Below are positions 10,686 to 44,030 of a stretch of 64,000 nt of DNA, piece by piece (positions within the stretch are counted from its first letter, which is position 1; every line of letters begins with the position of its first letter). The position numbers and the translations under genes are program-made. The notes beneath the pieces were generated by a model. The model ran no database searches and was not told where the DNA came from. It saw nothing but the letters and a program-made list of their open reading frames with translations. The stretch is from positions 258,513 through 322,512 of IMG/VR virus record IMGVR_UViG_3300037882_003354; one strand, given 5' to 3'.

Positions 10686-10898
10686 TTATTCAATAGTTTT
10701 GCCAGCCTTTTTCACCCAATCGTCTGGAATTCGATTATGTTTTTCCACAAAAAGGTCATGCAATTTTTTAGGAGTGATGTTATATTTTTTAGCGATGGAT
10801 TTCATCATGTGATCAATGGCATCATATCCCAGCGGATTTTTTAAATCTTTTTCCAGATCCTTGACAGCATCTTCTCTGATCAAATCTAAAATTTTCAT
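10686..10898 (-). CDS. small putative internal head protein
   Basis: MKILDLIRE N-terminus. Confidence 0.6.
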   Translation of the reverse strand: MKILDLIREDAVKDLEKDLKNPLGYDAIDHMMKSIAKKYNITPKKLHDLFVEKHNRIPDDWVKKAGKTIE

Positions 10899-13054
10899 TT
10901 CTTCTTGCTGGGATTCTTGGCAGCATAACTAGCAGCCACTGCCATTTGACGACGCTTTTCCTTGGTCTTGCCACGGAATTGTGGAGCATTGGATTTTTCA
11001 AAGTCTTTGATGTATACATCCACTGGCGCATTTGCTGGAATCTTCTCTGCCAGAACATTTTCTAGAGTGGCTTGCAACCTTTGGGCATACGCATCACTAG
11101 ATTCGTTGGGCACACAATTGTTCACTCGGATGCCGCCCTTGATCTTGGTGCCCTCTTTGTGCTTGCCCTTCCAGCACTTGGCATCAAGTCGTTGTTTGAT
11201 TTCCATCATGTTGTTGCCATGTGTTTCACACATGCCACAATCTGGACATGTCATTTCCATCATCAGGTCTTCATTGTGTTTTTTCTTACCAGCACAATGT
11301 GCCTTTTGACTGAAGCCCTTGGGATGACTGCAATTGATGCTGCCCTTGTACTTTTGACTCCAGGCTTCATTATAGTTGTCGTGTTTGTCACGAATGGCAT
11401 CCAACTTCTTTTCACTGGCACCATCACGCCCTGCCTTGGCCAATGATTGCATGCCTTTTTTACCATACTTCTCATAGCCTTTGGCAGCACGACTCATTGT
11501 ACGCTCGCCTTCTGCCACATCTTCTTCCTTGGCAGTCTTTGCTGCGTCTTTCCAGGCCTGGTCCGTGGGTGCTTTGGGGTTGGATGCAGATCTACTGGTG
11601 CCTGCCTGCTTGCGCTTGTTCACATAGTAGTAAAGACCTTTCTTCTCAGCCTCCGCTACACCTTGCTCGCCGATCTTGTCACCAGGAACATTACCTTTCA
11701 TTCGTATGACACTTTTAGCACTGTGACCGGCGGCAATGCGTCGGGCGTCGGCATCATCTTTGGCAACAAACTTCTTTACTTGACCATTACGCAGCATCAT
11801 TTCGTATTTTTGTGTTGATCCTTCTTCCACACCTTCGTCCTTGGCCCGTCCTGACTTCATGTTAGCCAACCAATGCGCCATGCGTTGCTTCTCACCAGAA
11901 CTATGCCGGGCTGTGTCGCGCAATGAGCTGACACTGGCCCCGGTGTTGACTCCCGAACGTTTGGCCAGGCCCTTACGACCAGGGTTTTTGCCATCTTTGA
12001 AGTTTTCCGCCATGCCTGTGTCATGTTGCTCACCACTGATGCTTTGCAACACAGAATTTAGATAATCAGCGGCCTTGGTGATCTTGCTCTGTTGCCAGGC
12101 TTGCAATCCCTCACGTTCGCTGTACCGGCGCACCAGGTCCAACAAATTCACGGCATTTTTGGCAATGCTCTGCAACTCACTGCTGGCCATCTGAATCTCG
12201 TGATCTTCCGACACACCTTCTTTTGGTTCAGGTAAGTCAGGTAAGCCTAATTTTTTAAGAAGTTCAGGATTTACTTTTTTTAGTTTTTGTAGTTGCGACT
12301 GTATTTCTTTTTTACGCTGGGCTATTGCTTCTGGGCTATAGGCGCGCTGTTCTCTACGATCACCGCTGGGAGTACGATTATCCATTTCGGTAACATCTTT
12401 ACTTGCGGTCTTTTCGGACAATTTCTTGCCAATTTGTTCCGACCTGATCATTTTGATCAAACCGAGTTGTTCTCTGGCAATTTTATGTTCAGGATTCTTT
12501 TCCAGAGCACGATTCCAGAACTGTATTAAATCAGCCAATTCTTTGTCGCTCTTGCTTCTTAAATTTTGCTCTTGGTTGAAGGGGCTGGAATTAGAGCCCT
12601 CCGCCACATCTTTCTGGCCACGCAGGTCTTTCAACCGGGCCTTCAACTGGTTTAACTCGCCAGCATTACTGTCTGTTCCGGACAGTTTGCGGTCATACAT
12701 TATTTGACGGATGCGAGTCTCAATTTGTTTTTCGGTGGTGTACTCATCTGCACTTTCAGCAAAAGGTTTTTTGTGTTTTTCGTTGCCCTGCTTCTGTGCT
12801 CGCTTTTTGTCCACGTGAGCGCCAGCACCTCCTGTGGTGGCATTCTTGGCTACAAAGTTTCTGGGCTTGCTAGTAGGAACCACTTCTTTTTTATCTGCTT
12901 CTTGTGCAATCAGATTGTCACCACGTTTGCGAACACCACCCATGGGGCTACTCACACTGGCAATACTTCCTGAACTGGTACCGCCGCCGGTTGCACTTTC
13001 CAGTGTATACACAGTTTCCGTTTTGTTTTGTTTTTTGCTGAATTCGGTTGTCAT
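10895..13054 (-). CDS. modular basic protein with repeated (V/L/M)xE sites; putative protease-processed internal head polyprotein
   Basis: DVAEG x2, GVAEA, GVEEG, GVSED, GMAEN, FAES, VLAEK separate short K/R-rich modules. Confidence 0.6.
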   Translation of the reverse strand: MTTEFSKKQNKTETVYTLESATGGGTSSGSIASVSSPMGGVRKRGDNLIAQEADKKEVVPTSKPRNFVAKNATTGGAGAHVDKKRAQKQGNEKHKKPFAESADEYTTEKQIETRIRQIMYDRKLSGTDSNAGELNQLKARLKDLRGQKDVAEGSNSSPFNQEQNLRSKSDKELADLIQFWNRALEKNPEHKIAREQLGLIKMIRSEQIGKKLSEKTASKDVTEMDNRTPSGDRREQRAYSPEAIAQRKKEIQSQLQKLKKVNPELLKKLGLPDLPEPKEGVSEDHEIQMASSELQSIAKNAVNLLDLVRRYSEREGLQAWQQSKITKAADYLNSVLQSISGEQHDTGMAENFKDGKNPGRKGLAKRSGVNTGASVSSLRDTARHSSGEKQRMAHWLANMKSGRAKDEGVEEGSTQKYEMMLRNGQVKKFVAKDDADARRIAAGHSAKSVIRMKGNVPGDKIGEQGVAEAEKKGLYYYVNKRKQAGTSRSASNPKAPTDQAWKDAAKTAKEEDVAEGERTMSRAAKGYEKYGKKGMQSLAKAGRDGASEKKLDAIRDKHDNYNEAWSQKYKGSINCSHPKGFSQKAHCAGKKKHNEDLMMEMTCPDCGMCETHGNNMMEIKQRLDAKCWKGKHKEGTKIKGGIRVNNCVPNESSDAYAQRLQATLENVLAEKIPANAPVDVYIKDFEKSNAPQFRGKTKEKRRQMAVAASYAAKNPSKKK

Positions 13055-13419
13055 TTTTTATTCATCCAATTGTTTATGGGACTCACAGTGTTGGTGGTCT
13101 TTAGTTCTTCACTGTCCATGTTACCATGATTGATGTCTTCGTAGTCGGCACCCATGGCCTCGGCTGCTTGCTTGAACATTTCTTGTTCTAGGGGTGTGTA
13201 TGGATGCACAGTTTTCTTTTTGCCGTACCATGATTTATAATCCATATCCAGTGGATCAGATCCGTTGGCGCACGCCATGGCCAGGCCCATTCGGTATGCT
13301 GTGTAAGTGCTATCCATACGCTCATGGTCGCCGTAGGTGTTGATGCCCACACTGGACTGTTGTGCTCTTTGGGAAATTTTTCCAACGGTTTTTTCCACAA
13401 TGAATTCTTTGGATCTCAT
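13051..13419 (-). CDS. putative internal head protein
   Basis: MRSKEFIVE N-terminus. Confidence 0.6.
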   Translation of the reverse strand: MRSKEFIVEKTVGKISQRAQQSSVGINTYGDHERMDSTYTAYRMGLAMACANGSDPLDMDYKSWYGKKKTVHPYTPLEQEMFKQAAEAMGADYEDINHGNMDSEELKTTNTVSPINNWMNKK

Positions 13420-13423
13420 GGCA

Positions 13424-13861
13424 TTATACTTTTGAACTGGCTTTTAGGAACCAGGCATGCTTTTTATGTGAGTCCATGCGTTCTGCAAGAAAATTTGAAA
13501 GTCCATGTGCACCAGCAACCTCAGCAGCATCATAATTTTTCTTTAATACTATCTGTATACGCTCGCTGTCTTGCAACAGTTCTTGGATCATGTCTTCCTT
13601 GCTGGGCACGCGATCTTCATCTTCAATGCGGGTCAACATGCTGAGATTGTGGTAACTGGTGGGCATGTAACCCCCCAGTTTACGTACATTTTCTGCATAG
13701 GGGTCAATGGCACCGTAAACTTCAGTGTAGATTTCTTCAAACAATTTATGGTATTCGTAAAAGTCTGACCCCTCTATGTTCCAGTGCATGGAATGCACCT
13801 TGACATAAAAACTAAAAGTGGTGGCAAAACCTATACGAGTCAGTTGAATTAATTTATCCAT
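13424..13861 (-). CDS. dps: Dps / ferritin-like DNA protection protein
   Basis: HWNIEGSDFYEYHKLFEEIY...IDPYAE...HKKHAWFL. Confidence 0.9.
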   Translation of the reverse strand: MDKLIQLTRIGFATTFSFYVKVHSMHWNIEGSDFYEYHKLFEEIYTEVYGAIDPYAENVRKLGGYMPTSYHNLSMLTRIEDEDRVPSKEDMIQELLQDSERIQIVLKKNYDAAEVAGAHGLSNFLAERMDSHKKHAWFLKASSKV

Positions 13862-13862
13862 T

Positions 13863-14171
13863 TTATTCCCCCACCGGCTTCTCGCCGGTCATGTATTGTC
13901 TGGCAAACCATAATCGAAACCATTCGGGAGTGCCAGGGCGAATGTCATTCTGCCGCATGATCTCTGCCTTCTCTGTTCCGGTTACACTGATATTACTACC
14001 TTTATTTATTTCTTCTTGGTGGCGTCGGTATTCTGCCAGCCGGGCTTGACCACCCAGCCCTGCCAGATACTGTACAATTTTTAACTCGTGTATGGGATCC
14101 GCTGGGTCAAGATGGCAGTCATCAGGGTCATCCCTGGGGATATTATCAGTGCTTATTCGGTACTGCTTCAT
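13863..14171 (-). CDS. hypothetical protein
   Basis: ORF in operon, IRPGTPEWFRLWF motif. Confidence 0.7.
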   Translation of the reverse strand: MKQYRISTDNIPRDDPDDCHLDPADPIHELKIVQYLAGLGGQARLAEYRRHQEEINKGSNISVTGTEKAEIMRQNDIRPGTPEWFRLWFARQYMTGEKPVGE

Positions 14172-16063
14172 TTGACTGCACGTTCTATCAATCGCAGCAT
14201 GGCCTGGGCCATGGCCATCTCATATTCTTCACCCAGCGGAACCTGACGGCTTTCTGCGACCGGCGCTGGTGCAGCAGGCGCCGCTGGTGCAGGTTCATCA
14301 GTCAGTCCCATGCCTTCTCTGGTGGCTTGATACAAGGTCTTGCCAGCCACTTGGATCTTGGCTCCAACTCCAGTTGCTTGTTGGAATCCTGACTCATTGC
14401 CCTCAGCGGCATATTTACGAGCCAAGGATCCACTGATTCCAGTGACATTGGTAGTATCAGCATCTCTTTCACCGCTGCTGACAAAACTCAGGTGCACATA
14501 TTCTCTGGCACCTGCGGGGTCAGTCGAACGGACTGGTCCGCTGTTCCAGCCGTTGAGTAATTTCTCAATGCTGCCAGCACCCTTGCCCAGACGATCACTG
14601 CCGCCAATGAATGTCATGTTGCGGAATCCCTTGGCATACAACCAATTGGCTGCATAGATGGGACCCAGTACATAGTCAGTGACGATGTGCTTGGCAAACT
14701 CAGGATAAATTTGTTTGATGAACGCAGCCTTGGTGGCGGGATCCAGAGGATCGTCCTTGGTGCCACTGCTGTTGCTCAGGAATATGAAACTGTTGGCGCC
14801 GCCGGTCTCCACGGTCTTTGCCATGACCAACTGATGTCCCAGGGTGGGTGGATTCATGCGGCCGAAACAGAACGCAGCCATGGGGCCCTGTTTTTTAGCA
14901 GCAACTTCTTCATCAGGCACTCGGTGCTTGGCAAAGTTGGCACGACTGAATCCCAGACGATCAATCAACTTGAGTTTGTCCTTGCCACCACCGAAAACAT
15001 AACCTTCGTGTGCGTTAACACCATCTGTGATGGCAATGATTTCACTGCCCTGTTGCTGGGAGTCAATCTGTTGCTTGATGTGTGTCTTGAGTTCAGTCAC
15101 TGCTGCCCACATGGTCCAGATGCCCAACAGTCCAGGACCACCACCATCTTCTTGATACAACCAACCGTCCCGGTTGGTGCCCAGCATTTTTTGTGCAGCA
15201 CCTTCGCTCAGTCGGCCACGAACAAACTCCAGGAATCTGGGCACGATTTCGTTGCTGATGTCATTCTCTTCCAGCATGCTGGTGATAAACGGACCCATGG
15301 CTGTGATCACACTCTTGCCCTTCATGGCAGTCAGCTCATCAATAAATTTGTCCACAGCCGGCCCATTGGCAGCAATGATGTTTTGAGTCTCTTTGATCAA
15401 GTTGGGATTAATTTTAACTATTGGCTTATCACGCATTTCACCAACCATGAAAGTGACACCTTGTTTTTCTTTGAGACCCTTCAATCCCACCAGTGGTGTG
15501 TCTCCCTGACCCAGACCAGGAATATAAGTGTGCACAGCAATACCGCCCACGCTGGCACCAATGGTTTCACCAAGTTCGCCCTCAATCTTCACACGATATT
15601 CCACGGTGTTGGGCTTGAATACAAAATATCCATTGTCAGTGGGTGGCGTACCAGTCCACATGAGATCGCCCATGTAGAAGAAATCGGTGCCCTGTGGTAC
15701 AATTCGCTCCAGGGCAGGGCGCAAGATACTCTCCTTCTCCCAGAGATCATTACGGTTGGCGCCACGACCTTCGTCATATGCCCTGATGGTCATGAATTCC
15801 ATCTTGCCCTTGGCCACCTTGTCGTACATGTGTTTGTCTGCAAACACCAGTTGACCCTGATCATCTCGTCCAAACACCACGGCGGGAAATCCATCCCACT
15901 TGACAGTCACTGTCTTGGGGTCTTTTTGCAAGGAAATCAGTTCCTGCACCACTCGCTGTGCGCCCTTGCTGCCACTTGTGATGATGAGATCTTCAGGGTG
16001 GTCAATGCCTTCACGCAACACCGGCGCTGTACTTGAACGGTTGAACAGTTCTCTTAGTATCAT
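14168..16063 (-). CDS. RNA-ligase-like covalent nucleotidyltransferase domain fused to a HIGH-superfamily (cytidylyl/adenylyltransferase-like) domain
   Basis: N-terminal KWDG, MGDL, HEGYV, KLIDR; C-terminal FGRMNPPTLGH, GSDR, ISGSLAR. Confidence 0.65.
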   Translation of the reverse strand: MILRELFNRSSTAPVLREGIDHPEDLIITSGSKGAQRVVQELISLQKDPKTVTVKWDGFPAVVFGRDDQGQLVFADKHMYDKVAKGKMEFMTIRAYDEGRGANRNDLWEKESILRPALERIVPQGTDFFYMGDLMWTGTPPTDNGYFVFKPNTVEYRVKIEGELGETIGASVGGIAVHTYIPGLGQGDTPLVGLKGLKEKQGVTFMVGEMRDKPIVKINPNLIKETQNIIAANGPAVDKFIDELTAMKGKSVITAMGPFITSMLEENDISNEIVPRFLEFVRGRLSEGAAQKMLGTNRDGWLYQEDGGGPGLLGIWTMWAAVTELKTHIKQQIDSQQQGSEIIAITDGVNAHEGYVFGGGKDKLKLIDRLGFSRANFAKHRVPDEEVAAKKQGPMAAFCFGRMNPPTLGHQLVMAKTVETGGANSFIFLSNSSGTKDDPLDPATKAAFIKQIYPEFAKHIVTDYVLGPIYAANWLYAKGFRNMTFIGGSDRLGKGAGSIEKLLNGWNSGPVRSTDPAGAREYVHLSFVSSGERDADTTNVTGISGSLARKYAAEGNESGFQQATGVGAKIQVAGKTLYQATREGMGLTDEPAPAAPAAPAPVAESRQVPLGEEYEMAMAQAMLRLIERAVK

Positions 16064-17088
16064 GATGCAAATAATCCTTTAACCATTTCCAATCCACTCA
16101 GGATCTTTTTCTTGTCTTCTTCTGCCCGTGCCATGGCCTGTGGGGTCTCTGCCTTGTCACGTTTTTTGCCCTGAACATCTATCATGGCCTTCTCTTCATA
16201 ACGACGGACAAACTGAGACAAGAAGTCATCTGCTGATGTAAAATTGGCCAGGTTGCCCTGACCAAACATGTTGTTGATTTCAAAACTACGTGCCAATCCT
16301 TTGACACCGTTGACCAGTATGGAAATCTTGATGTTGTTGATGTCTGATCCTGTGTTTTGTTTTAACAATGGATCTACCTTGACTCGGCCGAGGTCACCAC
16401 CTGCCTGCTGTACTTCGTATTTGAAGATGTCCAACAGCCAGGTGTTGGGATTGGTGGTGACTGTGACGGTCTGAGTGTCTTTTTGCTTGGAGAACGACAC
16501 ACGCTGGTCGTCCACAACTTTTAACTGTACTCCAGCATGTTGTATGCTCATGTCCAAGAGTTCACCAGTCACGCTGTACATGTTGCCAGCCAGTAATCCC
16601 TTTTGTCCACGCTCGGGTGTCACACGAGTGGCTCCCCAGTCTCTCATCTTTTCCTCGTGCCACATGAAATCAATCTGTACAAAGTCCTTGGCACCGATCT
16701 TGAATATGGGATGCCCGGGCTTGCTTTCGGCTGTGTCCACATAGGGCACATGCCCTGCTTTGACAAACTCGTCTGCTAGTTTATTCCAATGGGTAGTGAA
16801 CTGACCGTAACTGGTGCCCTCCACTGGCGGGGCGATCATTTGCAGATCAATGTCTCCGTATATTTTATCTGGATTCTCTGCGGCATCTTGCTCGTGGTAG
16901 GCGCTGCTGCCTGTGGGACGACCGCGTTCTACGGGGCCTAAACCTTTTTGTTCTAGGAATCGGTTAAAGTCTGTAACGAAGTTGTCAACCACCTTGAGGG
17001 CATGACCCACCACAGCGGGATGCAACACAGTTCCTTGTGTGATCTTGGTGTCCCATCCACCTTCTCTGAGTAATTCAAAGATTTTCAT
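16060..17088 (-). CDS. Pol-beta-superfamily nucleotidyltransferase (putative)
   Basis: TGSSAY...YGDIDL and third Asp in VQIDF; MKIFELLREGG N-terminus. Confidence 0.6.
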   Translation of the reverse strand: MKIFELLREGGWDTKITQGTVLHPAVVGHALKVVDNFVTDFNRFLEQKGLGPVERGRPTGSSAYHEQDAAENPDKIYGDIDLQMIAPPVEGTSYGQFTTHWNKLADEFVKAGHVPYVDTAESKPGHPIFKIGAKDFVQIDFMWHEEKMRDWGATRVTPERGQKGLLAGNMYSVTGELLDMSIQHAGVQLKVVDDQRVSFSKQKDTQTVTVTTNPNTWLLDIFKYEVQQAGGDLGRVKVDPLLKQNTGSDINNIKISILVNGVKGLARSFEINNMFGQGNLANFTSADDFLSQFVRRYEEKAMIDVQGKKRDKAETPQAMARAEEDKKKILSGLEMVKGLFAS

Positions 17089-17975
17089 TGTAGGTGGTCC
17101 ATGATAAATCTAAACCACTCACGAGTACCTTCTTGCACAGCAGGTGCAGGGTAGAATTTTTCAACAGCCTTCCACTTTTCGGGATATCGTTGCAGGGCTT
17201 TCTTGATACCAGACAGACTGGATATGTCTCGGGCCGATGCTTCAGGTCCAATCAGGAACTGGGCAATTTTATCCTTCTCAGCACCACTGGCCACCACTTG
17301 CCCAGTCTCACGGTCCACCAACCCGTGGTCCGGACTGAATTGAAAGTTGCCCTTGGTCTCACCAGTCTTGGGATCCACTATTTGTTTTTGGCTGCTGACC
17401 TTGGCCAGTGCAGGGTAGATCTCATTCCACAAATCACCGCCACGCATGCCTGCATCCTGGCTGAAATCATGTGTGTGCAGACTCCAGCCTGCGCGTGGTC
17501 GCACAATGAGGTCTATGGAATAACTTTTACCACCGGCTGTATAATGCACAGTGAGTGTGCCAGGGTCTGTATCCATGCCGTTTGTGGTCATGTAGTCAGC
17601 CAGGGCAGCCTTGCTGGCGCTCATTTGCAATTTGGCTTTTTTTGCAGGATCTGACAGGGCGTTGGCCATGGCCTTGGGACCCATGGGCTTGTCAGAGGCG
17701 GCATTCCATTGTTCTATGTCGGCTGGAAACTTTTGCAGCAGTTCCTGTGGGTCGATCATGATGTCGATGTCGCCAGAATCTGTGCGTAATGTGCCTGGAT
17801 AGGGATGCTCGGGATCAAAACTGCCAGCACCACCAGATGTCCACCCTGCCGCTATGCCGGCTTTTTGCAATATGGGATTTATTTTAGCCTTGGCTGCAAG
17901 GTATGCTGCCTTGTCCACACGACTTAGGTCAACTCCTGCTGAGGCAAGGCGCTTGCCGGCTTCTTGTATGGTCAT
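17085..17975 (-). CDS. Pol-beta-superfamily nucleotidyltransferase (putative)
   Basis: GAGSF...SGDIDIMID and YSIDL. Confidence 0.55.
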   Translation of the reverse strand: MTIQEAGKRLASAGVDLSRVDKAAYLAAKAKINPILQKAGIAAGWTSGGAGSFDPEHPYPGTLRTDSGDIDIMIDPQELLQKFPADIEQWNAASDKPMGPKAMANALSDPAKKAKLQMSASKAALADYMTTNGMDTDPGTLTVHYTAGGKSYSIDLIVRPRAGWSLHTHDFSQDAGMRGGDLWNEIYPALAKVSSQKQIVDPKTGETKGNFQFSPDHGLVDRETGQVVASGAEKDKIAQFLIGPEASARDISSLSGIKKALQRYPEKWKAVEKFYPAPAVQEGTREWFRFIMDHLQ

Positions 17976-17976
17976 T

Positions 17977-18354
17977 TTATTGCCCCAGTTTGTACTTGTC
18001 CTTGATCACATCCTCTTGGAAGTGGTCAAACAGTTTTTCGCACATGTCTTTTTGTAATTCCTTGGTGAATATCTTTTCAGGATGGCCTGTCAAATCAGCA
18101 TGCTTGTAATATTCCATGCATCCTTTCTTGACCATGGGCATGAACTCTTGTACCAGTGAGTCTTTGTCCAAGGTATCATGTTTTTTGTGTGCCTGTTGCA
18201 TTTTCTTGGCCAGCGGCAGCAAGTAGTCTTTATGCAATCTGTCATGATCCACAATATACCAAAATAGGTCATCACCTATGTTTTTTTCTTTGTGATCCTT
18301 TTCCAACTTTTTGGTTGGATTCACGGCTTTTCCGAAGAATTCATTTAACAGCAT
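17977..18354 (-). CDS. hypothetical protein (putative head-associated)
   Basis: MLLNEFF N-terminus. Confidence 0.65.
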   Translation of the reverse strand: MLLNEFFGKAVNPTKKLEKDHKEKNIGDDLFWYIVDHDRLHKDYLLPLAKKMQQAHKKHDTLDKDSLVQEFMPMVKKGCMEYYKHADLTGHPEKIFTKELQKDMCEKLFDHFQEDVIKDKYKLGQ

Positions 18355-18384
18355 ATTATATGCCCCTGTAAATTTTGTGGTGCA

Positions 18385-18801
18385 TCACCATGATCTGCAA
18401 CTCCAATAGTTGGCCTTGGTTCTGGGTCCAGGATTATCGCAATGATGCCTTGCTCGGTAACTTCGTCTACGAGCAGGGTTGGATTTCTTAATACGCATGG
18501 TTTTGTCGCCAAAATTTACTTTTTTAATGTTGCCAGTCTTGGGATCCTTGACAAAGACCTTAGACTTTTTAACATCGCCAGCCATTTTTTTGTTCAAGGT
18601 GACTTTACGCCCGTGATATTCGGCTTCAGTCAAGTCAGTGATGGGCAAGTAGGCCAGGGCAATGGCATCGATGCTGATGACGGGTCCGTCATCTCGCATG
18701 CCGATGACAATGGTTTCTAACACAATGTCATCCAGTTCTAATTCAAAGACATCGCCCTCTTGGAGGTCATCTGAATTGGTCAATAGGTCGCTAAAACGCA
18801 T
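18385..18801 (-). CDS. acidic pro-region plus basic C-terminal domain; putative internal head protein
   Basis: MRFSDLL..LQEG..LTEA then KKVNFGD..RRRSYRARHHC..ANYWSCRSW. Confidence 0.65.
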   Translation of the reverse strand: MRFSDLLTNSDDLQEGDVFELELDDIVLETIVIGMRDDGPVISIDAIALAYLPITDLTEAEYHGRKVTLNKKMAGDVKKSKVFVKDPKTGNIKKVNFGDKTMRIKKSNPARRRSYRARHHCDNPGPRTKANYWSCRSW

Positions 18802-18826
18802 AATACTCTCCGTGCAGAGTATTTAT
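18802..18826 (-). promoter_or_regulatory. late promoter (ATAAATA) embedded in an RBS-sequestering hairpin
   Basis: AATACTCT-GCACGG-AGAGTATT immediately before ATG 18801. Confidence 0.65.
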
Positions 18827-18848
18827 TACATTTTAATCAAATGAAAAT

Positions 18849-19244
18849 TTAGTGATTGTACAGTATGGACTCTACTGACCCAGCGTCGATGGCAACATAC
18901 CCACGCACCCAGACAAAGTTACCGGTGAAATTAAAGTAATCCACTGTGCTGGTGTTTCTAAAATTACCGAATGTATAGTTCACGGTGGTGTTGGTCACTG
19001 TGAACCAGTCAGATTCCACAGGGCTAGTGGCCAGGCTGGCCTGCATGGTCACAGTGCCAAAGAATTCAGGGCTGGCGGTGTACATGACTGTGTGCAGTCC
19101 ATCGCTGCTGCCGTAATACCCATCGCCCTGTACTGGCAGACTGGTATACACCAGGGTGGATGTTGCAGAATTGGGGTATACAACAGCCACACTGCTGGTG
19201 CTGTTGTATATTGAGAATGTTAATCCTTGGCTTAGGGCTGGCAT
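18849..19244 (-). CDS. beta-rich putative virion structural protein
   Basis: S/T/V/Y-rich, FTGNFVWVR; TATAAATA at 19267-19274 upstream. Confidence 0.6.
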   Translation of the reverse strand: MPALSQGLTFSIYNSTSSVAVVYPNSATSTLVYTSLPVQGDGYYGSSDGLHTVMYTASPEFFGTVTMQASLATSPVESDWFTVTNTTVNYTFGNFRNTSTVDYFNFTGNFVWVRGYVAIDAGSVESILYNH

Positions 19245-19936
19245 GACATTTCCTGTTCTAGTTCAGTATTTATACTATCTCGCGTTATAAACTTGGTCAC
19301 AGACTGCACAGCATCTCCCATGAACATGCCCACCATGGTCAACAATTGACTGTCTTCCACGTACAAGAAGGGTGTTTGAACCCATCCACGATTGCCGCGA
19401 AACCACTCGGTGTTATTTTTAGAAACGTTGAATCGGTCTCCATAATTGCGAGACCAATCGTAAAACTTCTGTCTGAGTTCTCTTGTTGTGGTGTGTTTAA
19501 AAATCACCTTGTACATATACCGACCGTGTGGCAAGTCATCGCACAGCACGGCCTTGTGTCCATTCTCCAGGATAAAATCCAATTCAGTGTCAGTGTCGGG
19601 AGAATGAATCTCGGTAATCCACGGATTCAATGCTGTGGTAATCTGATTTAGCAAACCCACATCACCGCAAAATATATTAAAATGACGCCCCTCCACACGA
19701 GATTTTACATCAGTTCTGTTCAAAAACGGCTGTATTGCATGGAAGAATGTCCGTAGTTCTTGAGGATTGGCATTGATATGATTCTTACCGTAGGTGGCCC
19801 ATGATCCACCCATCATCAACCGTGATTGAGAGGTGTTACTGGCCCGCATGAGCTGGCTGGCGCCGTTGATCACGCAGCACACCTTGTAGGGCCATTTTTT
19901 GTAAAACAGCCGATTAGTTTTCAACTGGCGTGGCAT
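19232..19936 (-). CDS. hypothetical protein
   Basis: ORF between clpA and the structural gene; likely ATG 19936. Confidence 0.7.
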   Translation of the reverse strand: MPRQLKTNRLFYKKWPYKVCCVINGASQLMRASNTSQSRLMMGGSWATYGKNHINANPQELRTFFHAIQPFLNRTDVKSRVEGRHFNIFCGDVGLLNQITTALNPWITEIHSPDTDTELDFILENGHKAVLCDDLPHGRYMYKVIFKHTTTRELRQKFYDWSRNYGDRFNVSKNNTEWFRGNRGWVQTPFLYVEDSQLLTMVGMFMGDAVQSVTKFITRDSINTELEQEMSCQP

Positions 19937-22181
19937 CACTTTTAACCTTGACAACTGGTAAAATGTCTACAATATTGAGTTTTAACTTATCGGCTTCTAC
20001 CGACACCTCAACCATCCCGCCGTTGACCAGACGTCCGAACAGGATCTCCTTGCTCAATGGTTTCTTGATCATGTCATCAATGACACGCTGTAGCGGACGA
20101 GCTCCCATCTTGGGATCAAATCCGCGGCTGATCAGGTATTCCACGGCTGCGGCGTTGGGTTTGATATGAATGTTCTTTTCTTTGACCAGGGTGTTGAGAT
20201 CATCAACAAACTTCTTGACGATCTTGGCCATGGTCACATGATCCAGCTTGCCGAATCTAATGACACCATCCAGTCGATTGCGGAACTCTGGTGCAAAGAA
20301 CTTGTTGACAGCATCCTTGGGATCACTATCTCGTTCCAGGCTACCAAATCCCACACCGTTTTTGTCGGCATCAGCAGCACCCAGGTTGCTGGTCATGATG
20401 ATGATAGCGTTGCGCCCATCGGCCCGCTTGCCATTGCTGCCCGTGATGAATCCGTTGTCCATCAACTGCAACATGATATTCAGCACATCAGGGTGGGCCT
20501 TTTCCACTTCGTCCAGCAGCAGAATACAATTGGGATTTTCCTGGAGATTGGTGATCAGTTGTCCAGCATTGTCATCGAAACCCACGTAGCCCGGTGGGCT
20601 GCCGATAAACTTGGCCACTGAGTGCTTCTCTTGAAACTCACTCATATCAAATCGGATCAACTTGGTGTTCAGATTGGAGGCCAATTGTTTGGCTGCCTCA
20701 GTCTTGCCCACACCGGTGGGTCCCACGAACAGGAAACTGCCCACGGGTTTATTGGGAGACTTCAATCCAGCCTGTGCAATAAAGATTTTATCCAGCAACA
20801 CTTCGATAGCTTTTTCCTGTCCGAACACCTTGGACTTCATGTTTTTCTCCAGGCCAGTTAGGTTGACGCTCTCTTTGTTTGAGATCTGATCCACCGTCAA
20901 GTTGGCAATTTTGCTCACCTCGAACAAAATTTCATCGTGATCCACAATACCACCCACCTCGTCACGTACTTTGAACCTGGCACAAGCGCAGTCGATTAGA
21001 TCGATGGCCTTGTCGGGCAATTTTTTATCTGCCATGTATTTCACGCTGTACTTGACAGCATCAGCAATGGCCTGACTGGTGATTTTGACACCGTGGTGCT
21101 TTTCATAATACTTCTTGAGACCCTTGAGGATTTTGATGGCAGTGGCTTCATCAGGCTCGTCGATGGTCACACGCTGGAACCGGCGCATGAGCGCACGATC
21201 CTTTTCAAAGTACTTGCGATACTCTTCCCAGGTGGTGCTGGCAATGACCTTGATGCCGCCCTTGCCCAGTGCAGACTTCAACATGTTGGCCATGTCGTTA
21301 CTGCCACCATTGGATGCACCTGCACCATTCATCATGTGCGCTTCATCGATGAACACAATACAGTTGCCCTTCTTTTCCACGGCATTGATCACTGACTTGA
21401 GTCTTTCCTCAAAATCACCACGGTACTTGCTGCCTGCCAGCATGGCTGAGATGTCCAGACTGTAAACTGTGTGATCCTTGATAAAGTTGGGCACATTGCC
21501 TTCATGAATTTTACGAGCAATGCCTTCTGCGATGGCTGTCTTGCCCACGCCTGGATCACCAATCAAGATGGCATTGGCCTTGGTACGCCGTGCCAACACC
21601 AGTTCGATTTCTTCAATCTCTCGATCGCGGCCAATCACAGGGTCAATCTTCTTGGCCTTGGCACGGGCACTAAGGTCTGTGCAAAATTGTGCCAACATTT
21701 TATCTGAATGCACTGATCCCCTGGTGGGGGCAACCTCATCCTCATCTTTAATTGATGTCTTACTGATGAACTCTACAAAACGATCTTTTTCAATGTTTGC
21801 TTTTTTTACAAAGAAGTTGGCATGGCTGGACTTTTCGGAGAACATGCTGATGAAGCAATCCATGGGTTCAACAGTGCGCCGGCCACTGAACAACACTTGT
21901 GTGAATGCTCGATTCAACATTCGATCCACAGTGGATGTTTTTCTAGGTTTCACGTTACCGTTGGTCACAATGTTCTGTAAATCAACAGCGATGTAAGACT
22001 CCAGGTCTCGTTTTAGGTCGTCTACATTTGCACCAAATGTGCCCAGAGTTTCTGCAAAGGTAGTGTTGCCCAGCATGCAGTATAAAAAATGTTCAAGGGT
22101 AATGTATTCGTGATTATTATCACTGGCTAAAATTACAGCATCTTCAAAAATCTGTTCTAACTCTTTATTGGGTTCCAACAT
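19914..22181 (-). CDS. clpA: ClpA-type AAA+ ATPase (Hsp100)
   Basis: HEYITLEH N-domain, two Walker A motifs (GDPGVGKT, GPTGVGKT), FDMSEF, VGFG loop, MGARPL. Confidence 0.93.
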   Translation of the reverse strand: MLEPNKELEQIFEDAVILASDNNHEYITLEHFLYCMLGNTTFAETLGTFGANVDDLKRDLESYIAVDLQNIVTNGNVKPRKTSTVDRMLNRAFTQVLFSGRRTVEPMDCFISMFSEKSSHANFFVKKANIEKDRFVEFISKTSIKDEDEVAPTRGSVHSDKMLAQFCTDLSARAKAKKIDPVIGRDREIEEIELVLARRTKANAILIGDPGVGKTAIAEGIARKIHEGNVPNFIKDHTVYSLDISAMLAGSKYRGDFEERLKSVINAVEKKGNCIVFIDEAHMMNGAGASNGGSNDMANMLKSALGKGGIKVIASTTWEEYRKYFEKDRALMRRFQRVTIDEPDEATAIKILKGLKKYYEKHHGVKITSQAIADAVKYSVKYMADKKLPDKAIDLIDCACARFKVRDEVGGIVDHDEILFEVSKIANLTVDQISNKESVNLTGLEKNMKSKVFGQEKAIEVLLDKIFIAQAGLKSPNKPVGSFLFVGPTGVGKTEAAKQLASNLNTKLIRFDMSEFQEKHSVAKFIGSPPGYVGFDDNAGQLITNLQENPNCILLLDEVEKAHPDVLNIMLQLMDNGFITGSNGKRADGRNAIIIMTSNLGAADADKNGVGFGSLERDSDPKDAVNKFFAPEFRNRLDGVIRFGKLDHVTMAKIVKKFVDDLNTLVKEKNIHIKPNAAAVEYLISRGFDPKMGARPLQRVIDDMIKKPLSKEILFGRLVNGGMVEVSVEADKLKLNIVDILPVVKVKSDATPVEN

Positions 22182-22681
22182 TATCTATAATTCCTTTTTT
22201 TGGTTTTTTTAACAGCCAATGCCCACTTGAGCACACTGACACGATCTTGATAAACAATACCTTCCAAATGATCTAATTCATGTAGGAAGCATTTGCAGTT
22301 GTATCCGTCGAACTCTGATTCTTGTAGTTCCCCTTGGGAGTTTTGCCATCTTGCAATTATTTTCTTTGGACGTTTGATGTTAACATAAACATTGGGAAAA
22401 CTCAAACATCCTTCTTCCAAATCGTCAGTCTCATCCACAGTGGCCACCACCATGGGATTGAAGAACGCTTGCACCGTGTCAGGATTGTCTCGGTGGCCCA
22501 TGACAAACATTCGAGCACGGATGCCCACTTGGTTGGCAGCCAGTCCAATGCCATCATGTGTCAACATGGTGTCCGCCAGGTCTTTTTCCAGTTGCACAGG
22601 ATTCAGGCTGGGATTTGCAAAATCAAATTCGGGCACACGCTCCCGCAAGATATCATTGGGAAATTTAATTATTTTCAACAT
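22181..22681 (-). CDS. def: peptide deformylase
   Basis: GIGLAANQVG, EGCLS, HELDH. Confidence 0.96.
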   Translation of the reverse strand: MLKIIKFPNDILRERVPEFDFANPSLNPVQLEKDLADTMLTHDGIGLAANQVGIRARMFVMGHRDNPDTVQAFFNPMVVATVDETDDLEEGCLSFPNVYVNIKRPKKIIARWQNSQGELQESEFDGYNCKCFLHELDHLEGIVYQDRVSVLKWALAVKKTKKRNYR

Positions 22682-22689: not shown

Positions 22690-23532
22690 TTAATTAATGA
22701 ATTGACGCAGTAATTCTTTTTGTCGATCAGACAGACCCACGGGCACAGTTATGTTGACACTGAGCAACATGCGACCTTTAAATCGGTTGTCCGATGCCTT
22801 GGGCATGCCATACCCTGCGGCCGCCAACACTTGACCGTGCTGTGTCCCGGGATTGATTTTAATTTCCAAGGTGCGCTGATCCAGAGTGGTCACGTTGATT
22901 GTGGTGCCCAGCATGGCGTCAACACAATTTAAACTTAGATTGGTCATCAGATCATCGCCCTGACGTTGAAATACAGCATGTGGCTGTACATGTATAGTAA
23001 GGTGTAAATCTCCTCTGGGCAGGTTTACGTGGGCGTCATCTCCCAGCCCCTGCAATCGCAGCGTGACCCCATCGTGGACACCAGCGGGTATCCTGACCTC
23101 CACCACTTGATCCCTACCACTGGGCAATCGCAATGTGGCAATCAAATCCTTGCCATGAAACGCTTCCTCCAGAGTTATTGAGGTTTGAATATTCAGTGTT
23201 CTGTTGCGCGGGGGCGGCTGTGGCGCACGCTGTCCAAAAATATCACCAAATGGATTACCATGCCCAAAGGCATGCGACATGAAATCTGACATTGGATCCC
23301 GCCCCTGCTGGAATCCTGGAGGAAATCCCTGTGGTTGTGGGTTGTCGTATTGTTGCCGTTTGCCAGGATCACTCAGCGTGGCATATGCCTCTTGAATTTT
23401 TTTAAATTCGGTGTCGTCCCCACCTGTGCGGTCAGGGTGATGTCGCATGGCCAGTTTGCGATAGGATCGTTTGATGTCTTCTTCAGAAGCATTTCGCTCG
23501 ACACCTAGTATTTGATAGTAATCTGTGGTCAT
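22690..23532 (-). CDS. DnaJ-class co-chaperone lacking the zinc finger (class B/CbpA-like)
   Basis: DYYQILGV, HPD motif, G/F-rich linker, C-terminal GDLHL/GDDL. Confidence 0.92.
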   Translation of the reverse strand: MTTDYYQILGVERNASEEDIKRSYRKLAMRHHPDRTGGDDTEFKKIQEAYATLSDPGKRQQYDNPQPQGFPPGFQQGRDPMSDFMSHAFGHGNPFGDIFGQRAPQPPPRNRTLNIQTSITLEEAFHGKDLIATLRLPSGRDQVVEVRIPAGVHDGVTLRLQGLGDDAHVNLPRGDLHLTIHVQPHAVFQRQGDDLMTNLSLNCVDAMLGTTINVTTLDQRTLEIKINPGTQHGQVLAAAGYGMPKASDNRFKGRMLLSVNITVPVGLSDRQKELLRQFIN

Positions 23533-29263: not shown

Positions 29264-29453
29264 GTTTGAACTCCATGTGAGGTAGGATGCAGTTGTCGAA
29301 AATTTGTGCCATGTTATTGTAGATGTGCTCTCTTTCTGAGTGCGTGGTCCCACATGCCATGACATTGCAACCAAAACCCACTGCCCTTTCTAGGCCGTAG
29401 TCGTGTCTGTAAGTATAGCACATGGACAGAATGATGTCTTCACGAGTTTTCAT
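29247..29453 (-). CDS. hypothetical protein
   Basis: MKTREDIILSMCYTYRHDYGL. Confidence 0.6.
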   Translation of the reverse strand: MKTREDIILSMCYTYRHDYGLERAVGFGCNVMACGTTHSEREHIYNNMAQIFDNCILPHMEFKHDTHS

Positions 29454-29913
29454 GTTTGGATCGTTCTGCCGCTGCCACTCTTTTACGCAGGCTGCTGCTG
29501 GAGAAGCTATGGTCTCTTCCATTGAAGACAATTTCTATGCCACGTTTCTTACAGATATCTTTGCCTGTAAATTCCTGATCAGCGTATTCCACACCTAATA
29601 CTCTAACATCAACTGGTAAAATTAGCAATAGATCTTCAAGATCTTTTTCAGTCTGATAGACCACCACTTCGTCCACATTACGATTGGTGGCCAACTGAAT
29701 TTGTCGCTCCACTATGCTCTGTATGGGAGCATTTTTAGTTGTGGGCCTGTCTATGGTGGGGTCTGTTTGTAGCGCAGCAATCAGGTAATCGCAGTGGTTT
29801 CTCGCTTCGGCCAGCATGGCTATGTGACCAGAGTGAAAAAGATCAAATGCAGAAAACACGATGCCAATTTTAAACCCTTCTTGTTTGAGTTGTTTGACCT
29901 TGTTGAATATCAC
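29440..29913 (-). CDS. cytidylyltransferase-family (TagD / HldE adenylyltransferase-like)
   Basis: FDLFHSGH, QSIVER, FSSSSLR. Confidence 0.88.
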   Translation of the reverse strand: MIFNKVKQLKQEGFKIGIVFSAFDLFHSGHIAMLAEARNHCDYLIAALQTDPTIDRPTTKNAPIQSIVERQIQLATNRNVDEVVVYQTEKDLEDLLLILPVDVRVLGVEYADQEFTGKDICKKRGIEIVFNGRDHSFSSSSLRKRVAAAERSKHENS

Positions 29914-43836: not shown

Positions 43837-43854
43837 CATAACACATTAATTCAT

Positions 43855-43930: not shown

Positions 43931-43940
43931 AAATGATAAA

Positions 43941-44028: not shown

Positions 44029-44030
44029 AG

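What the first reader, a model, noticed from the sequence alone, without database searches (positions are those of the whole stretch)
14168..17975. Three tandem nucleotidyltransferase-like genes (RNA-ligase-like + HIGH fusion, two Pol-beta NTases) that appear to be virion-packaged
Seen: ligase-type motifs KWDG/GD/EGYV/K fused to FGRMNPPTLGH, then two proteins with GS..GDID..D. All three have cleavable-looking N-termini and two have xxE sites near the C-terminus (PVAES, AVQEG). Inference: an injected enzyme kit acting before phage gene expression. Options are tRNA/RNA end repair (ligation plus CCA-type addition) against anticodon nucleases, NAD+ re-synthesis by an NMNAT-like HIGH domain, or synthesis of decoy nucleotide signals. 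I know of no characterised system with this layout.
Basis: partly seen in the sequence, partly recalled or inferred. Interest (0 to 1): 0.75.

Follow-up and report, generated by a model that had tools for sequence, protein, structure and literature searches.

The report
Capsid-targeted ligase, NMNAT-like and PolX-like enzymes
A freshwater T4-like jumbo phage has three adjacent genes for a ligase-like enzyme fused to an NMNAT-like enzyme and two small polymerase-X-like enzymes, each with a T4-style head-targeting leader, so they are probably injected with the DNA as an early break-repair or counter-defence kit.

Summary
Three overlapping minus-strand genes lie at 14168-17975.

- **p3 (296 aa):** a distant paralogue of p2 (hhalign 91%).

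The genes are linked or fused in many phages.

The packaging idea is better supported than expected. All three families carry an unstructured leader resembling the T4 capsid-targeting sequence, ending in [LIV]-x-E directly before the conserved core in over 95% of homologues. Some homologues start exactly at that point. The genome encodes a gp21-type prohead protease. A leader-bearing cyanophage homologue of the p1 C-domain was reported in purified virions.

Function is inferred: 3'-end extension plus nick sealing of broken polynucleotides, together with NAD-type dinucleotide synthesis, straight after injection. RNA versus DNA is unresolved. This is a new variant of known kinds.

The parts
17085..17975 (-). 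p3: 296-aa Pol-beta-superfamily NTase, a distant paralogue of p2. Residues 1-5 form the leader (MTIQE|A). The core carries G51-S52, D69-x-D71 and D155. The optional C-terminal tail after AVQE| is encoded at nt 17088-17129.
   Evidence: Alignment A1 gives the invariant residues. hhalign of A2 against A1 gives probability 91%, E 9e-7. There is no Pfam, PHROG or PDB sequence hit. Language-model neighbours include an NTP_transf_2 cluster at 0.94. p3 was not folded here.
16060..17088 (-). p2: 342-aa family-X-polymerase-like NTase. The leader MKIFELLRE| is encoded at nt 17062-17088. The core begins at G10-G-W and carries G60-S61, D79-x-D81 and D140.
14168..16063 (-). p1: 631-aa fusion protein. The leader is residues 1-18 (nt 16010-16063). 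The DUF6267 ligase-like domain is residues 19-383 (nt 14915-16009), with K55 at nt 15899-15901. The HIGH (NMNAT/PPAT-like) domain is residues 389-592 (nt 14288-14899). A Pro/Ala linker and a C-terminal helix are encoded at nt 14171-14287.
10686..19244 (-). A tight string of 11 minus-strand genes with overlaps or gaps of at most 47 nt, which contains the three genes. Six of the eleven begin with M-x(2-3)-[ED]-[FLIMW]-hydrophobic: 10686-10898, 13051-13419, p1, p2, 17977-18354 and 18385-18801. A seventh, p3, has a shorter leader.
   Evidence: Genome-wide, 12 of 359 ORFs have this start, against 5.1 +/- 2.2 expected. Six of the 12 lie in this run. The hypergeometric P is 1.4e-7, or 5e-5 after correcting for all possible windows.
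19267..19274 (-). TATAAATA octamer (T4 late-promoter type), 23 nt upstream of the first gene of the string (18849-19244). This is a candidate late promoter and carries low weight.
   Evidence: One search finds 2 in the window, which is not above chance. One search finds 12 in the genome, equal to chance, but 6 of the 12 lie within 60 nt upstream of same-strand gene starts.
13863..14171 (-). 102-aa ORF overlapping the end of p1. Its C-terminus carries G-T-P-E-W-F-R, the same motif as the optional p3 tail (G-T-R-E-W-F-R).
   Evidence: These are the only two ORFs in the genome with this motif. No family hit was found.
13424..13861 (-). Dps/ferritin-like protein (145 aa) in the same gene string, with no leader.
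   Evidence: Pfam Ferritin matches at E 1.5e-19, and phrog_3636 at E 1e-28. A ferritin gene also follows the p1 homologue in L003.
10895..13054 (-). 719-aa lysine-rich, low-complexity protein in the same string. It has a Y-T-L-E|S site at residue 19 and a weak DUF7230 motif. It is a candidate internal (DNA-associated) head protein.
   Evidence: The sequence is. DUF7230 matches at E 4e-4. DUF7230 is fused to CTP_transf_like in a viral cluster. Its role is inferred only.

Best explanation
The three genes encode cargo enzymes of a T4-superfamily jumbo phage.

**Packaging (inferred).** Each protein is made with a short unstructured N-terminal leader resembling the T4 capsid-targeting sequence. The leader takes the protein into the prohead. 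The phage's gp21-type protease then removes it at [LIV]-x-E. The mature enzymes stay in the head and enter the cell with the DNA.

**Enzymes.**
- p1 joins a divergent ATP-type polynucleotide ligase domain (DUF6267) to an NMNAT/PPAT-like adenylyltransferase domain. The ligase domain has the KxDG lysine, has no OB domain, and is closest to RNA ligases that seal nicks.
- p2 and p3 are minimal family-X-polymerase-like nucleotidyltransferases.

**Most likely mechanism (inferred).** p2 and p3 extend or fill 3'-OH ends of broken polynucleotides using the cell's NTP pool. The p1 ligase domain then seals the resulting 3'-OH/5'-phosphate nick. The HIGH domain makes an adenylylated dinucleotide of the NAD+ type. 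The kit would act before any phage gene is expressed, against nucleolytic damage (tRNA or other RNA breaks, or nicks and gaps in the incoming genome) and possibly against NAD+ loss.

**Shown versus inferred.** Shown: enzyme class, conservation of catalytic residues, gene linkage, the leader and cut-site pattern, the protease gene, and virion detection of a homologue in the literature. Inferred: packaging in this phage, the substrates, and the order of reactions.
For: **Enzyme class.**

**Linkage.**
- DUF6267 and HIGH are fused or adjacent in nearly all of 109 loci.
- p3 is adjacent to DUF6267 throughout the jumbo clade and fused to it in L023/L039, L029, L046 and P0345.
- p2 is usually adjacent.
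- A separate lineage has RNA_ligase-like + HIGH-like + p2-like in one protein (P0467), and another has CTP_transf_like + p2-like (P0377).

**End-healing partners in relatives.** HIGH is fused to PAP2 phosphatase plus NTP_transf_2 in L063, to an AAA_33 kinase in L081, and to a Pol-beta NTase in L091. All three sit next to DUF6267.

**Packaging.**
- The leaders have pLDDT below 50.
- [LIVMF]-x-E precedes the core in over 95% of homologues, and 24 homologues start exactly at the cut.
- The genome has a Peptidase_S77 prohead protease, a portal and a gp23-like head protein.
- Leader-bearing genes are clustered, P 1.4e-7.
- T4 capsid-targeting rules, and the cleavage of Alt at both ends, are described in PMC9026906.
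- S-SZBM1_140 is a homologue of the p1 HIGH domain. It starts MRFRQFIIE|A and was found in CsCl-purified virions. The leaderless DUF6267 neighbour S-SZBM1_141 is not in that table (PMC9146016).
- NMNAT-like proteins were also reported in S-SCSM1, S-CBWM1 and S-CREM2 virions.
- In phage records, DUF6267 occurs only in T4-like phages.

**Precedents.** RlaP Pol-beta NTases work beside RNA ligases and add 1-2 NMP to damaged RNA 3' ends (PMC7824862, PMC12776372). NgrRnl seals nicks whose 3'-OH strand is RNA (PMC4408790 abstract).
Against: - No biochemical or proteomic data exist for this phage.
- p2 and p3 do not match the RlaP model.
- p2's best matches are DNA polymerases, so an RNA substrate is not favoured by that line of evidence.
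- The genome encodes no recognisable polynucleotide kinase/phosphatase next to the trio.
- The genome has its own canonical ATP DNA ligase, so DNA sealing by p1 is not obviously needed.
- Fusions among packaged 'polyvalent' proteins may reflect co-delivery rather than a shared pathway (PMC5512222). The [LIV]-x-E site kept at fusion junctions fits that view.
- The authors of the cyanophage virion proteomes themselves warn that abundant non-structural proteins can co-purify.
- The TATAAATA promoter evidence is at chance level in number.
Confidence: 0.45

Rival explanations
1. The enzymes are the same but they are not packaged. They are ordinary cytoplasmic early or middle enzymes of the replication/repair region, and the conserved N-terminal peptide has another role such as translation, stability or partner binding.
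For: - The genes lie about 70 kb from the head module, among DNA polymerase, Clp-like and DnaJ-like genes.
- In cyanophages the pair follows gp43-uvsX-gp41-mazG.
- Virion detection of homologues rests on 2-3 peptides, and the authors flag possible carry-over.
Against: - The leader is unstructured and dispensable, because some homologues start at the cut. It always ends in the gp21 consensus.
- It closely resembles the experimentally defined T4 capsid-targeting sequence.
- The leader-bearing homologue was detected in virions while its leaderless neighbour was not.
- T4 internal-protein genes are also outside the head module (my own knowledge).
Confidence: 0.22
2. The trio is a DNA repair kit for the phage genome, like the ASFV PolX plus ligase base-excision system or bacterial LigD-type ribo-patch repair. 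p2 and p3 fill gaps or add ribonucleotides at DNA 3' ends. The RNA-ligase-type domain then seals the 3'-ribo nick. This overlaps with the best explanation and differs only in naming DNA as the substrate.
For: - p2's best structural matches are family-X DNA polymerases including the thumb, and it covers 169 of 176 residues of minimal ASFV PolX.
- BFVD hits are giant-virus PolX proteins.
- The neighbours are a DNA polymerase and a Dps-like DNA-protecting protein.
- The nearest ligase structure, NgrRnl, seals duplex nicks with a 3'-RNA strand.
- The phage comes from sunlit freshwater.
Against: - p2 has no 8-kDa, fingers or HhH DNA-binding domains.
- A canonical DNA ligase is encoded elsewhere in the genome.
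- Cyanophages keep DUF6267 plus HIGH without p2 or p3.
- The ligase domain lacks the OB domain of DNA ligases.
Confidence: 0.2
3. The trio is a kit centred on NAD+. The HIGH domain is a true NMNAT that rebuilds NAD+ on entry against NADase defences. The ligase-like domain either uses that NAD+ as its AMP donor or is unrelated cargo.
For: - The top structural matches are NadM and archaeal NMNAT.
- The three NMNAT/NadD-type motifs occur in order.
- The literature reads the virion-borne cyanophage homologues as NMNAT.
- Jumbo phages are known to carry NAD+ salvage genes.
Against: - The genome has no Nampt/NAPRTase to supply NMN.
- NADase products are ADP-ribose and nicotinamide, not NMN (my own knowledge).
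- PPAT scores almost as well as NMNAT.
- The first histidine of HxGH is threonine, as in PPAT.
- This reading does not explain p2 and p3.
Confidence: 0.15
4. p2 and p3 synthesise signal or decoy nucleotides, in the manner of CD-NTases or OAS. Alternatively they transfer phospho-alcohols from a CDP/ADP-activated donor made by the HIGH domain, in the manner of LicD.
Against: - No LicD-type match was listed.
- The constant partner is a ligase-like domain, which fits polynucleotide ends.
Confidence: 0.06

Closest known systems
RNA ligase plus RlaP (PF10127) Pol-beta NTase repair modules of bacteria and phages (T4 NrdC.11, jumbo phages)
   Same: A ligase gene is consistently linked to a small Pol-beta-superfamily NTase. 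The proposed logic is to restore lost 3' nucleotides and then seal (PMC7824862, PMC12776372).
   Different: - p2 and p3 do not match the RlaP profile and look like PolX palm and thumb instead.
- The ligase is DUF6267, not Rnl1, Rnl2 or RtcB.
- A HIGH adenylyltransferase is a constant third partner.
- The proteins carry capsid-targeting leaders.
T4 internal proteins and Alt (capsid-targeting sequence MKTYQEFIAE, gp21 cleavage at L/I-x-E, injection with the DNA)
   Same: There is a leader of about 9-18 residues with hydrophobic positions that ends in [LIV]-x-E. A gp21-type protease is encoded in the genome. The cargo genes are clustered and variable. Alt gives a precedent for an enzyme cut at both termini (PMC9026906).
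   Different: The cargo here is a set of nucleotidyl-transfer enzymes, not small basic proteins or an ADP-ribosyltransferase. Packaging is not shown for this phage.
T4-like cyanophage gene pair T4-GC 71 (hypothetical, DUF6267) plus T4-GC 190 ('cytitidyltransferase'), and the virion-detected NMNAT-like proteins (S-SZBM1_140, S-SCSM1 ORF91, S-CREM2 ORF154)
   Same: They are homologous to the two halves of p1 (24-28% identity). They occur in the same order beside replication genes and are fused in S-PM2. The HIGH protein carries the same kind of leader.
   Different: Cyanophages lack p2 and p3. Their DUF6267 protein is often leaderless. No function has been assigned, and no paper in the searched library mentions DUF6267.
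Minimal family-X polymerases (ASFV PolX) paired with a viral ligase, and Rnl5-type nick-sealing RNA ligases (NgrRnl/DraRnl)
   Same: p2 superposes on nearly all of ASFV PolX. The p1 N-domain superposes best on the NgrRnl adenylyltransferase domain. The pairing of a polymerase with a ligase is the same.
   Different: Sequence identity is only about 10%, and there is no profile-level relation. DUF6267 has a helical insert of about 130 residues between motifs IIIa and IV, and it lacks the N-terminal OB-like domain of Rnl5.
Polyvalent injected proteins of phages and conjugative elements (Iyer et al. 2017)
   Same: Multi-enzyme polypeptides are predicted to enter with the DNA and to be cut into parts. 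Relatives fuse these domains with ParB/Srx, PAP2, a kinase, RimK plus Zn-protease, amidoligase and GGACT.
   Different: Processing here would be by the prohead protease at [LIV]-x-E, not by a zincin MPTase. The three window genes are separate ORFs.

Membership tests
Covalent nucleotidyltransferases (ATP-dependent RNA/DNA ligases, capping enzymes) | Motif I KxDG with the catalytic lysine | tested here: met
   K55-W-D57-G58 is invariant in 27 DUF6267 proteins at 19-69% identity.
Covalent nucleotidyltransferases (ATP-dependent RNA/DNA ligases, capping enzymes) | Motifs III, IIIa, IV (EGxx) and V (xKxK) in canonical order on beta strands | tested here: met
   G132-D133 lies on strand 128-137. P151-N152..Y156 and G174..H178 lie on strands. 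E353-G354-x-V356 lies on strand 354-357. K363/K365 lie on strand 364-367. All are invariant or nearly so. Assigning these to the named motifs is my inference.
Covalent nucleotidyltransferases (ATP-dependent RNA/DNA ligases, capping enzymes) | Adenylyltransferase fold shared with solved ligases | tested here: inconclusive
Covalent nucleotidyltransferases (ATP-dependent RNA/DNA ligases, capping enzymes) | Profile match to RNA_ligase, DNA_ligase_A_M or related Pfam/PDB sequences | tested here: not met
   Only DUF6267 is hit by all 27 members. There is no PDB sequence hit for the single sequence or for the profile. hhalign against the RNA_ligase-like P0467 gives probability 0.6%.
ATP-dependent DNA ligases | OB-fold domain with motif VI after the adenylyltransferase domain | tested here: not met
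   In the model, motif V is followed by one helix and then the HIGH domain. The only insert (residues 220-336) is helical.
HIGH-type nucleotidyltransferases (NMNAT / NadD / PPAT / cytidylyltransferases) | (H/T)xGH motif after the first strand, and a C-terminal SxTxxR-type motif | tested here: met
   F400-G-R-x-x-P-P-T407-x-G409-H410 and S544..R549 are invariant in 23 sequences. G488-x-D490-R491 is also invariant.
HIGH-type nucleotidyltransferases (NMNAT / NadD / PPAT / cytidylyltransferases) | Rossmann-like fold matching solved members | tested here: met
HIGH-type nucleotidyltransferases (NMNAT / NadD / PPAT / cytidylyltransferases) | Family profile match | tested here: met
   PHROG cytidyltransferase phrog_3041 matches at E 6e-26. 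Pfam CTP_transf_like is not reached by p1 itself but is reached by homologues.
NMNAT specifically (NMN + ATP gives NAD+) | Substrate specificity for NMN or NaMN | not testable with these tools
NARP2-type phage NAD+ reconstitution (Nampt plus Nmnat) | A partner Nampt/NAPRTase gene | tested here: not met
   PF04095 has no match in the complete 322.5-kb genome.
Pol-beta superfamily NTases | hG[GS] followed by DxD, then a third carboxylate on a later strand | tested here: met
   In p2, G60-S61, D79-x-D81 and D140 are invariant in 48 sequences. In p3, G51-S52, D69-x-D71 and D155 are invariant in 29 sequences.
Family X DNA polymerases | Palm plus thumb fold | tested here: met
Family X DNA polymerases | 8-kDa and fingers domains with HhH motifs; profile match to PolX families | tested here: not met
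   p2 aligns only with Pol beta residues 141-338. No Pfam hit was found for any of the 48 family members beyond single marginal ones.
RlaP (PF10127) | Match to the family profile | tested here: not met
   There is no hit for p2 or p3 at E up to 0.1, none among the 48 p2-family members and none in the six-frame genome. No RlaP-like protein appears in the BFVD top 50.
RlaP (PF10127) | Conserved gene linkage to an RNA ligase | tested here: met
   p3 and p2 are adjacent or fused to the ligase-like DUF6267 in the window and in more than 25 loci. This is an analogy of context only.
T4-type capsid-targeted, protease-processed head cargo | Short N-terminal targeting peptide ending in the L/I-x-E cleavage site, outside the folded domain | tested here: met
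   The leader statistics are, and pLDDT is below 50 for these residues. The T4 reference is in PMC9026906.
T4-type capsid-targeted, protease-processed head cargo | gp21-family prohead protease in the same genome | tested here: met
   PF03420 matches at E 7e-27 at C1:203239-203670, and phrog_207 at E 8.5e-59, beside the portal and major head genes.
T4-type capsid-targeted, protease-processed head cargo | Presence of the processed protein in virions | not testable with these tools
   Evidence exists only for relatives. S-SZBM1_140 and other NMNAT-like proteins were reported in purified cyanophage virions (PMC9146016, PMC9602691, PMC10665884).

The most novel reading that the evidence does not exclude
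T4-superfamily phages of lakes and oceans deliver a self-sufficient break-repair machine inside the capsid. PolX-like enzymes patch 3' ends with ribonucleotides. A new OB-less ligase family (DUF6267) seals the patch. The fused NMNAT-like domain regenerates the ligase's AMP donor (NAD+ from NMN and ATP) in cis. Sealing would then keep working in cells whose NAD+ or nucleic acids are being destroyed by abortive-infection defences.
Probability: 0.1. Interest if true: 0.85.

Novelty: new variant of a known kind. Interest (0 to 1): 0.64.

Why it matters
DUF6267 and its 'cytidylyltransferase' partner are among the conserved genes of unknown function in T4-like cyanophages, pelagiphages and freshwater jumbo phages.

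Reading DUF6267 as a ligase-type enzyme gives direct and inexpensive tests: self-adenylylation, nick sealing, primer extension and N-terminal mapping by virion mass spectrometry. So does recognising that these proteins and two new PolX-like families carry T4-style head-targeting leaders.

If confirmed, the known cargo of T4-type capsids would extend from small anti-restriction proteins and Alt to nucleic-acid repair and cofactor enzymes. The leader and cut-site pattern could then be used as a simple sequence rule for finding injected proteins in uncultured T4-like phages.

Tried and rejected
**Searches that found nothing**
- DNA search of the region against phage records found no match. A 20-kb search found only tRNA hits.
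- tblastn of p2 and p3 against phage records found nothing.
- NCBIfam gave no hits.
- PDB sequence searches found only noise. They used the p1 sequence and profiles of the p3 family, the p2 family and the DUF6267 domain.
- BLASTP of p2 against p3 showed no similarity. Only the profile comparison relates them.
- hhalign of the p2 family against the cyanophage neighbours T4-GC 534, 419 and 841 showed no relation.
- Literature searches for 'DUF6267' and 'cytitidyltransferase' found no papers.
- The sigma-70 promoter and terminator scan of 10-20 kb gave chance-level counts.

**Ideas considered and dropped**
- p1 as the phage's only DNA ligase: rejected, because a canonical ATP-dependent ligase lies at C1:107400-107984.
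- A CCA-adding role through a known family: no PolyA_pol in the genome.
- Membership of RNA_ligase PF09414 or RlaP: not met.
- A NARP2-type NAD+ pathway: no Nampt.
- A phiKZ-type S/A/G-x-E cleavage logic: dropped, because the protease is gp21-type and P3 is L, I or V.

- No complex prediction was run, because I do not claim that the proteins bind each other.
- No reads were laid. Metatranscriptome runs hold only 5-6% of the sampled words.

Full report
**Setting.** The window is the last 64 kb of a complete 322,512-bp virus record with direct terminal repeats.
- The genome encodes a T4 gp43-type DNA polymerase in the window.
- It also encodes a gp21-type prohead protease, a gp20-type portal and a gp23-type major head protein, about 55 kb upstream of the window.
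- There are 10 tRNA genes in the window.
- The region is found in many lake and freshwater metagenomes.
- This is therefore a freshwater jumbo phage of the T4 superfamily. No cultured close relative is present in the phage collection.

**Observation.** Three minus-strand ORFs with 4-nt overlaps occupy exactly the stated interval. They are p3 (17085-17975, 296 aa), p2 (16060-17088, 342 aa) and p1 (14168-16063, 631 aa). They belong to a tight string of 11 genes running from 19244 to 10686.

**p1, N-terminal domain.**
- Residues 20-379 match Pfam DUF6267 (E 5e-33). This family appears only in viruses, and no paper in the searched library mentions it.
- I aligned 27 members from jumbo-phage, pelagiphage-like and cyanophage-like contigs, at 19-69% identity to p1.
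- The invariant residues are H22, E24, D25, K55-W-D-G58, G132-D133, P151-N152, Y156, G174, H178, K326, E353-G354, V356 and K365.
- In the AlphaFold model (pLDDT 87) these residues sit in the order, and on the strands, expected for ligase motifs I, III, IIIa, IV and V. A helical insert (residues 220-336) lies between IIIa and IV, and there is no OB domain.
- Sequence profiles do not reach any ligase family.
- I conclude that DUF6267 is a divergent covalent nucleotidyltransferase of the ligase type. This is well supported by the motifs and moderately by the fold.

**p1, C-terminal domain.**
- Residues 389-592 match PHROG 'cytidyltransferase' families (E 6e-26).
- Three motifs are invariant in 23 fused or stand-alone homologues: F-G-R-x-x-P-P-T-x-G-H, G-x-D-R and S-x-S/T-x-x-R.
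- This is an active-looking adenylyltransferase of the NMNAT/PPAT type. Its acceptor cannot be decided by computation.

**p2 and p3.**
- Neither protein has a hit in Pfam, PHROG, NCBIfam or the PDB sequences.
- Both have large metagenomic families: 664 and 106 clusters at 90% identity. For p2 there are 205 clusters at 50% identity.
- p2 keeps G60-S61, Y77-G-D79-x-D81 and Q138-x-D140 in 48 sequences. p3 keeps G51, D69-x-D71 and D155 in 29 sequences.
- The two families are distantly related (hhalign 91%, E 9e-7, over the catalytic half).
- Terminal uridylyl/adenylyl transferases, OAS, cGAS and CD-NTases score lower and only over the roughly 100-residue core.
- p2 lacks the 8-kDa and fingers domains. 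It does not match RlaP.

**Linkage.** I built HMMs for the four domains and searched 109 fetched loci.
- DUF6267 and HIGH are fused or adjacent almost everywhere, including T4-like cyanophages. There they are annotated as T4-GC 71 'hypothetical' and T4-GC 190 'cytitidyltransferase'. They follow gp43-uvsX-gp41-mazG, and they are fused in S-PM2.
- In the jumbo-phage clade, p3 always sits next to p1 and is fused to it several times (P0345, L023, L029, L046). p2 is usually adjacent, and the gene order varies.
- Other lineages fuse a p2-like domain to an RNA_ligase-like plus HIGH-like N-terminus (P0467), or to CTP_transf_like (P0377).
- Beside DUF6267 in marine contigs, the HIGH protein is fused to PAP2 phosphatase plus a Pol-beta NTase, to an AAA_33 kinase, to a Pol-beta NTase alone, or to RimK plus Zn-protease. 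ESM Atlas clusters show similar architectures.
- A kinase, a phosphatase, an end-adding NTase and a ligase together make the classical end-healing and sealing set.

**Packaging.**
- *Leaders.* The leaders MILRELFNRSSTAPVLRE|G (p1), MKIFELLRE|GGW (p2) and MTIQE|AGKRL (p3) are unstructured in the models.
- *Cut site.* A hydrophobic-x-Glu triplet directly precedes the conserved core in 96/97 p1, 193/199 p2 and 92/94 p3 homologues. It does so even where the core follows an N-terminal fusion.
- *Leaderless starts.* One p1 homologue, 19 p2 homologues and 4 p3 homologues begin exactly at the core, as MEGIDH..., MGGW... and MAGKRL....
- *Resemblance to T4.* Typical leaders such as MRAFEFIVE and MKSYEFLIE are close to the T4 capsid-targeting sequence MKTYQEFIAE. 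Its targeting residues (positions 4 and 7) and processing residues (positions 8 and 10) were mapped experimentally. T4 Alt, an injected enzyme, is trimmed at both ends by gp21 (PMC9026906).
- *Clustering.* In this genome 12 of 359 ORFs start this way, against about 5 expected. Six of them lie in the 11-gene string (P 1.4e-7, or 5e-5 corrected).
- *Published proteomes.* In cyanophage S-SZBM1 the 'cytidylyltransferase' S-SZBM1_140 is the homologue of the p1 C-domain, and it begins MRFRQFIIE|A. It was identified in CsCl-purified virions. The adjacent DUF6267 protein S-SZBM1_141 has no leader and is not in that table (PMC9146016).
- *Other cyanophages.* NMNAT-like proteins were also reported in virions of S-SCSM1, S-CBWM1 and S-CREM2. 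The authors caution about carry-over.
- *Host range of the family.* DUF6267 occurs in phage records only in T4-like phages.
- *Candidate promoter.* A TATAAATA octamer sits 23 nt upstream of the first gene of the string. Such octamers are no more frequent than chance in the genome, although half of them precede gene starts. I give this little weight.

**C-terminal sites.**
- AVQE|G in p3 precedes an optional tail, G-T-R-E-W-F-R-F-I-M. The tail is present in 20/106 homologues, and 13 of those are preceded by [LIV]-x-E.
- The same G-T-x-E-W-F-R motif ends the 102-aa ORF downstream of p1.
- PVAE|S in p1 precedes a helix seen in only 3/120 homologues.
- C-terminal processing is therefore possible but weakly supported.

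**Function.**
- *Established here:* the enzyme classes, the conservation of catalytic residues, the linkage and the targeting pattern.
- *Inferred:* a head-delivered kit that extends 3' ends (p2, p3) and seals nicks (p1 ligase domain), with an adenylyltransferase that makes an NAD-type dinucleotide.
- *Points toward RNA:* the nearest ligase structures are RNA ligases. There is no OB domain. A separate canonical DNA ligase is encoded. RlaP provides a precedent.
- *Points toward DNA:* p2 resembles PolX including the thumb. The neighbourhood holds replication and Dps-like genes. NgrRnl-type enzymes seal duplex nicks with a 3'-RNA strand, which would fit ribonucleotide patching of the incoming genome.
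- *NAD+ rescue:* the absence of Nampt weakens a pure NAD+-rescue reading.
- *Caveat on fusions:* fusions among injected 'polyvalent' proteins may reflect co-delivery rather than one pathway. The Rosetta-stone argument is therefore weaker than usual. The DUF6267 plus HIGH pairing across very distant phages remains striking.

**Verdict.** The thing is a new variant of known kinds: ligase plus Pol-beta NTase repair modules, and T4-type capsid cargo. It provides a first functional reading for Pfam DUF6267 and for two unnamed PolX-like families. Interest is 0.64.

Noticed in passing
window 17088-17129 and 13863-13950: A C-terminal G-T-x-E-W-F-R amphipathic motif is shared only by p3 and the 102-aa ORF downstream of p1. 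In p3 homologues it is an optional appendage, present in 20/106. It may be a docking peptide, but it remains unexplained.
   Followed up: partly
P0362, P0363, P0441, BFVD A0A6J5TD12 (relatives of p2): In other uncultured phages, p2-like domains sit inside very long proteins. The partner domains are Amidoligase_2, GGACT/AIG2, DUF5661, DUF6934 or ParB/Sulfiredoxin. This resembles the 'polyvalent' injected proteins.
   Followed up: partly
P0307, P0311, P0312 (relatives of p1); ESM Atlas cluster row 3: Some p1 homologues carry a C-terminal pterin-4a-carbinolamine dehydratase domain. One viral cluster fuses DUF6267 to a Cu/Zn superoxide dismutase. The C-terminal extensions of p1 homologues vary, giving total lengths from 579 to 1084 aa.
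   Followed up: no
window 10895-13054: A 719-aa lysine-rich, low-complexity protein with a weak DUF7230 motif lies in the same gene string. DUF7230 is fused to CTP_transf_like in a viral protein cluster. It could be an internal DNA-associated head protein.
   Followed up: no
window 19914-22181, 22181-22681, 22690-23532: A ClpA/ClpB-like double AAA+ protein (phrog_4871, E 1e-253) lies just upstream of the string, followed by a probable DnaJ-like protein. The same Clp plus DnaJ neighbours precede p3 and p1 in a divergent relative (L001).
   Followed up: partly
window 43764-48809: A cluster of 10 tRNA genes: Asn, Ala, Ser x2, Lys, Leu x2, Cys, Thr and Gly.
   Followed up: no
window 33678-39797 and 31867-33633: A 2039-aa protein gives many tail-fibre, collagen-like and virion-structural PHROG matches. 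Next to it is a 588-aa tail-collar-fibre-like protein.
   Followed up: no
window 29440-29913 (C1:287994-288362) and C1:144504-144785: Two further small CTP_transf_like ORFs (about 150-160 aa) occur elsewhere in the genome. They reach the Pfam cut-off, unlike the p1 HIGH domain.
   Followed up: no
C1:210325-210942 (L110:12326-12943), C1:137481-138728, C1:117594-117995: Other ORFs start with the same kind of leader: MRIHDLIIE, MRAREFLRLLEE and MLLRELICE. The first lies about 3.5 kb from the portal gene. None has an informative family hit.
   Followed up: partly
window 18849-19244: The first gene of the string (131 aa) matches PHROGs that include 'virion structural protein' (phrog_14467, E 2e-8). 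It is the gene preceded by the TATAAATA octamer.
   Followed up: partly
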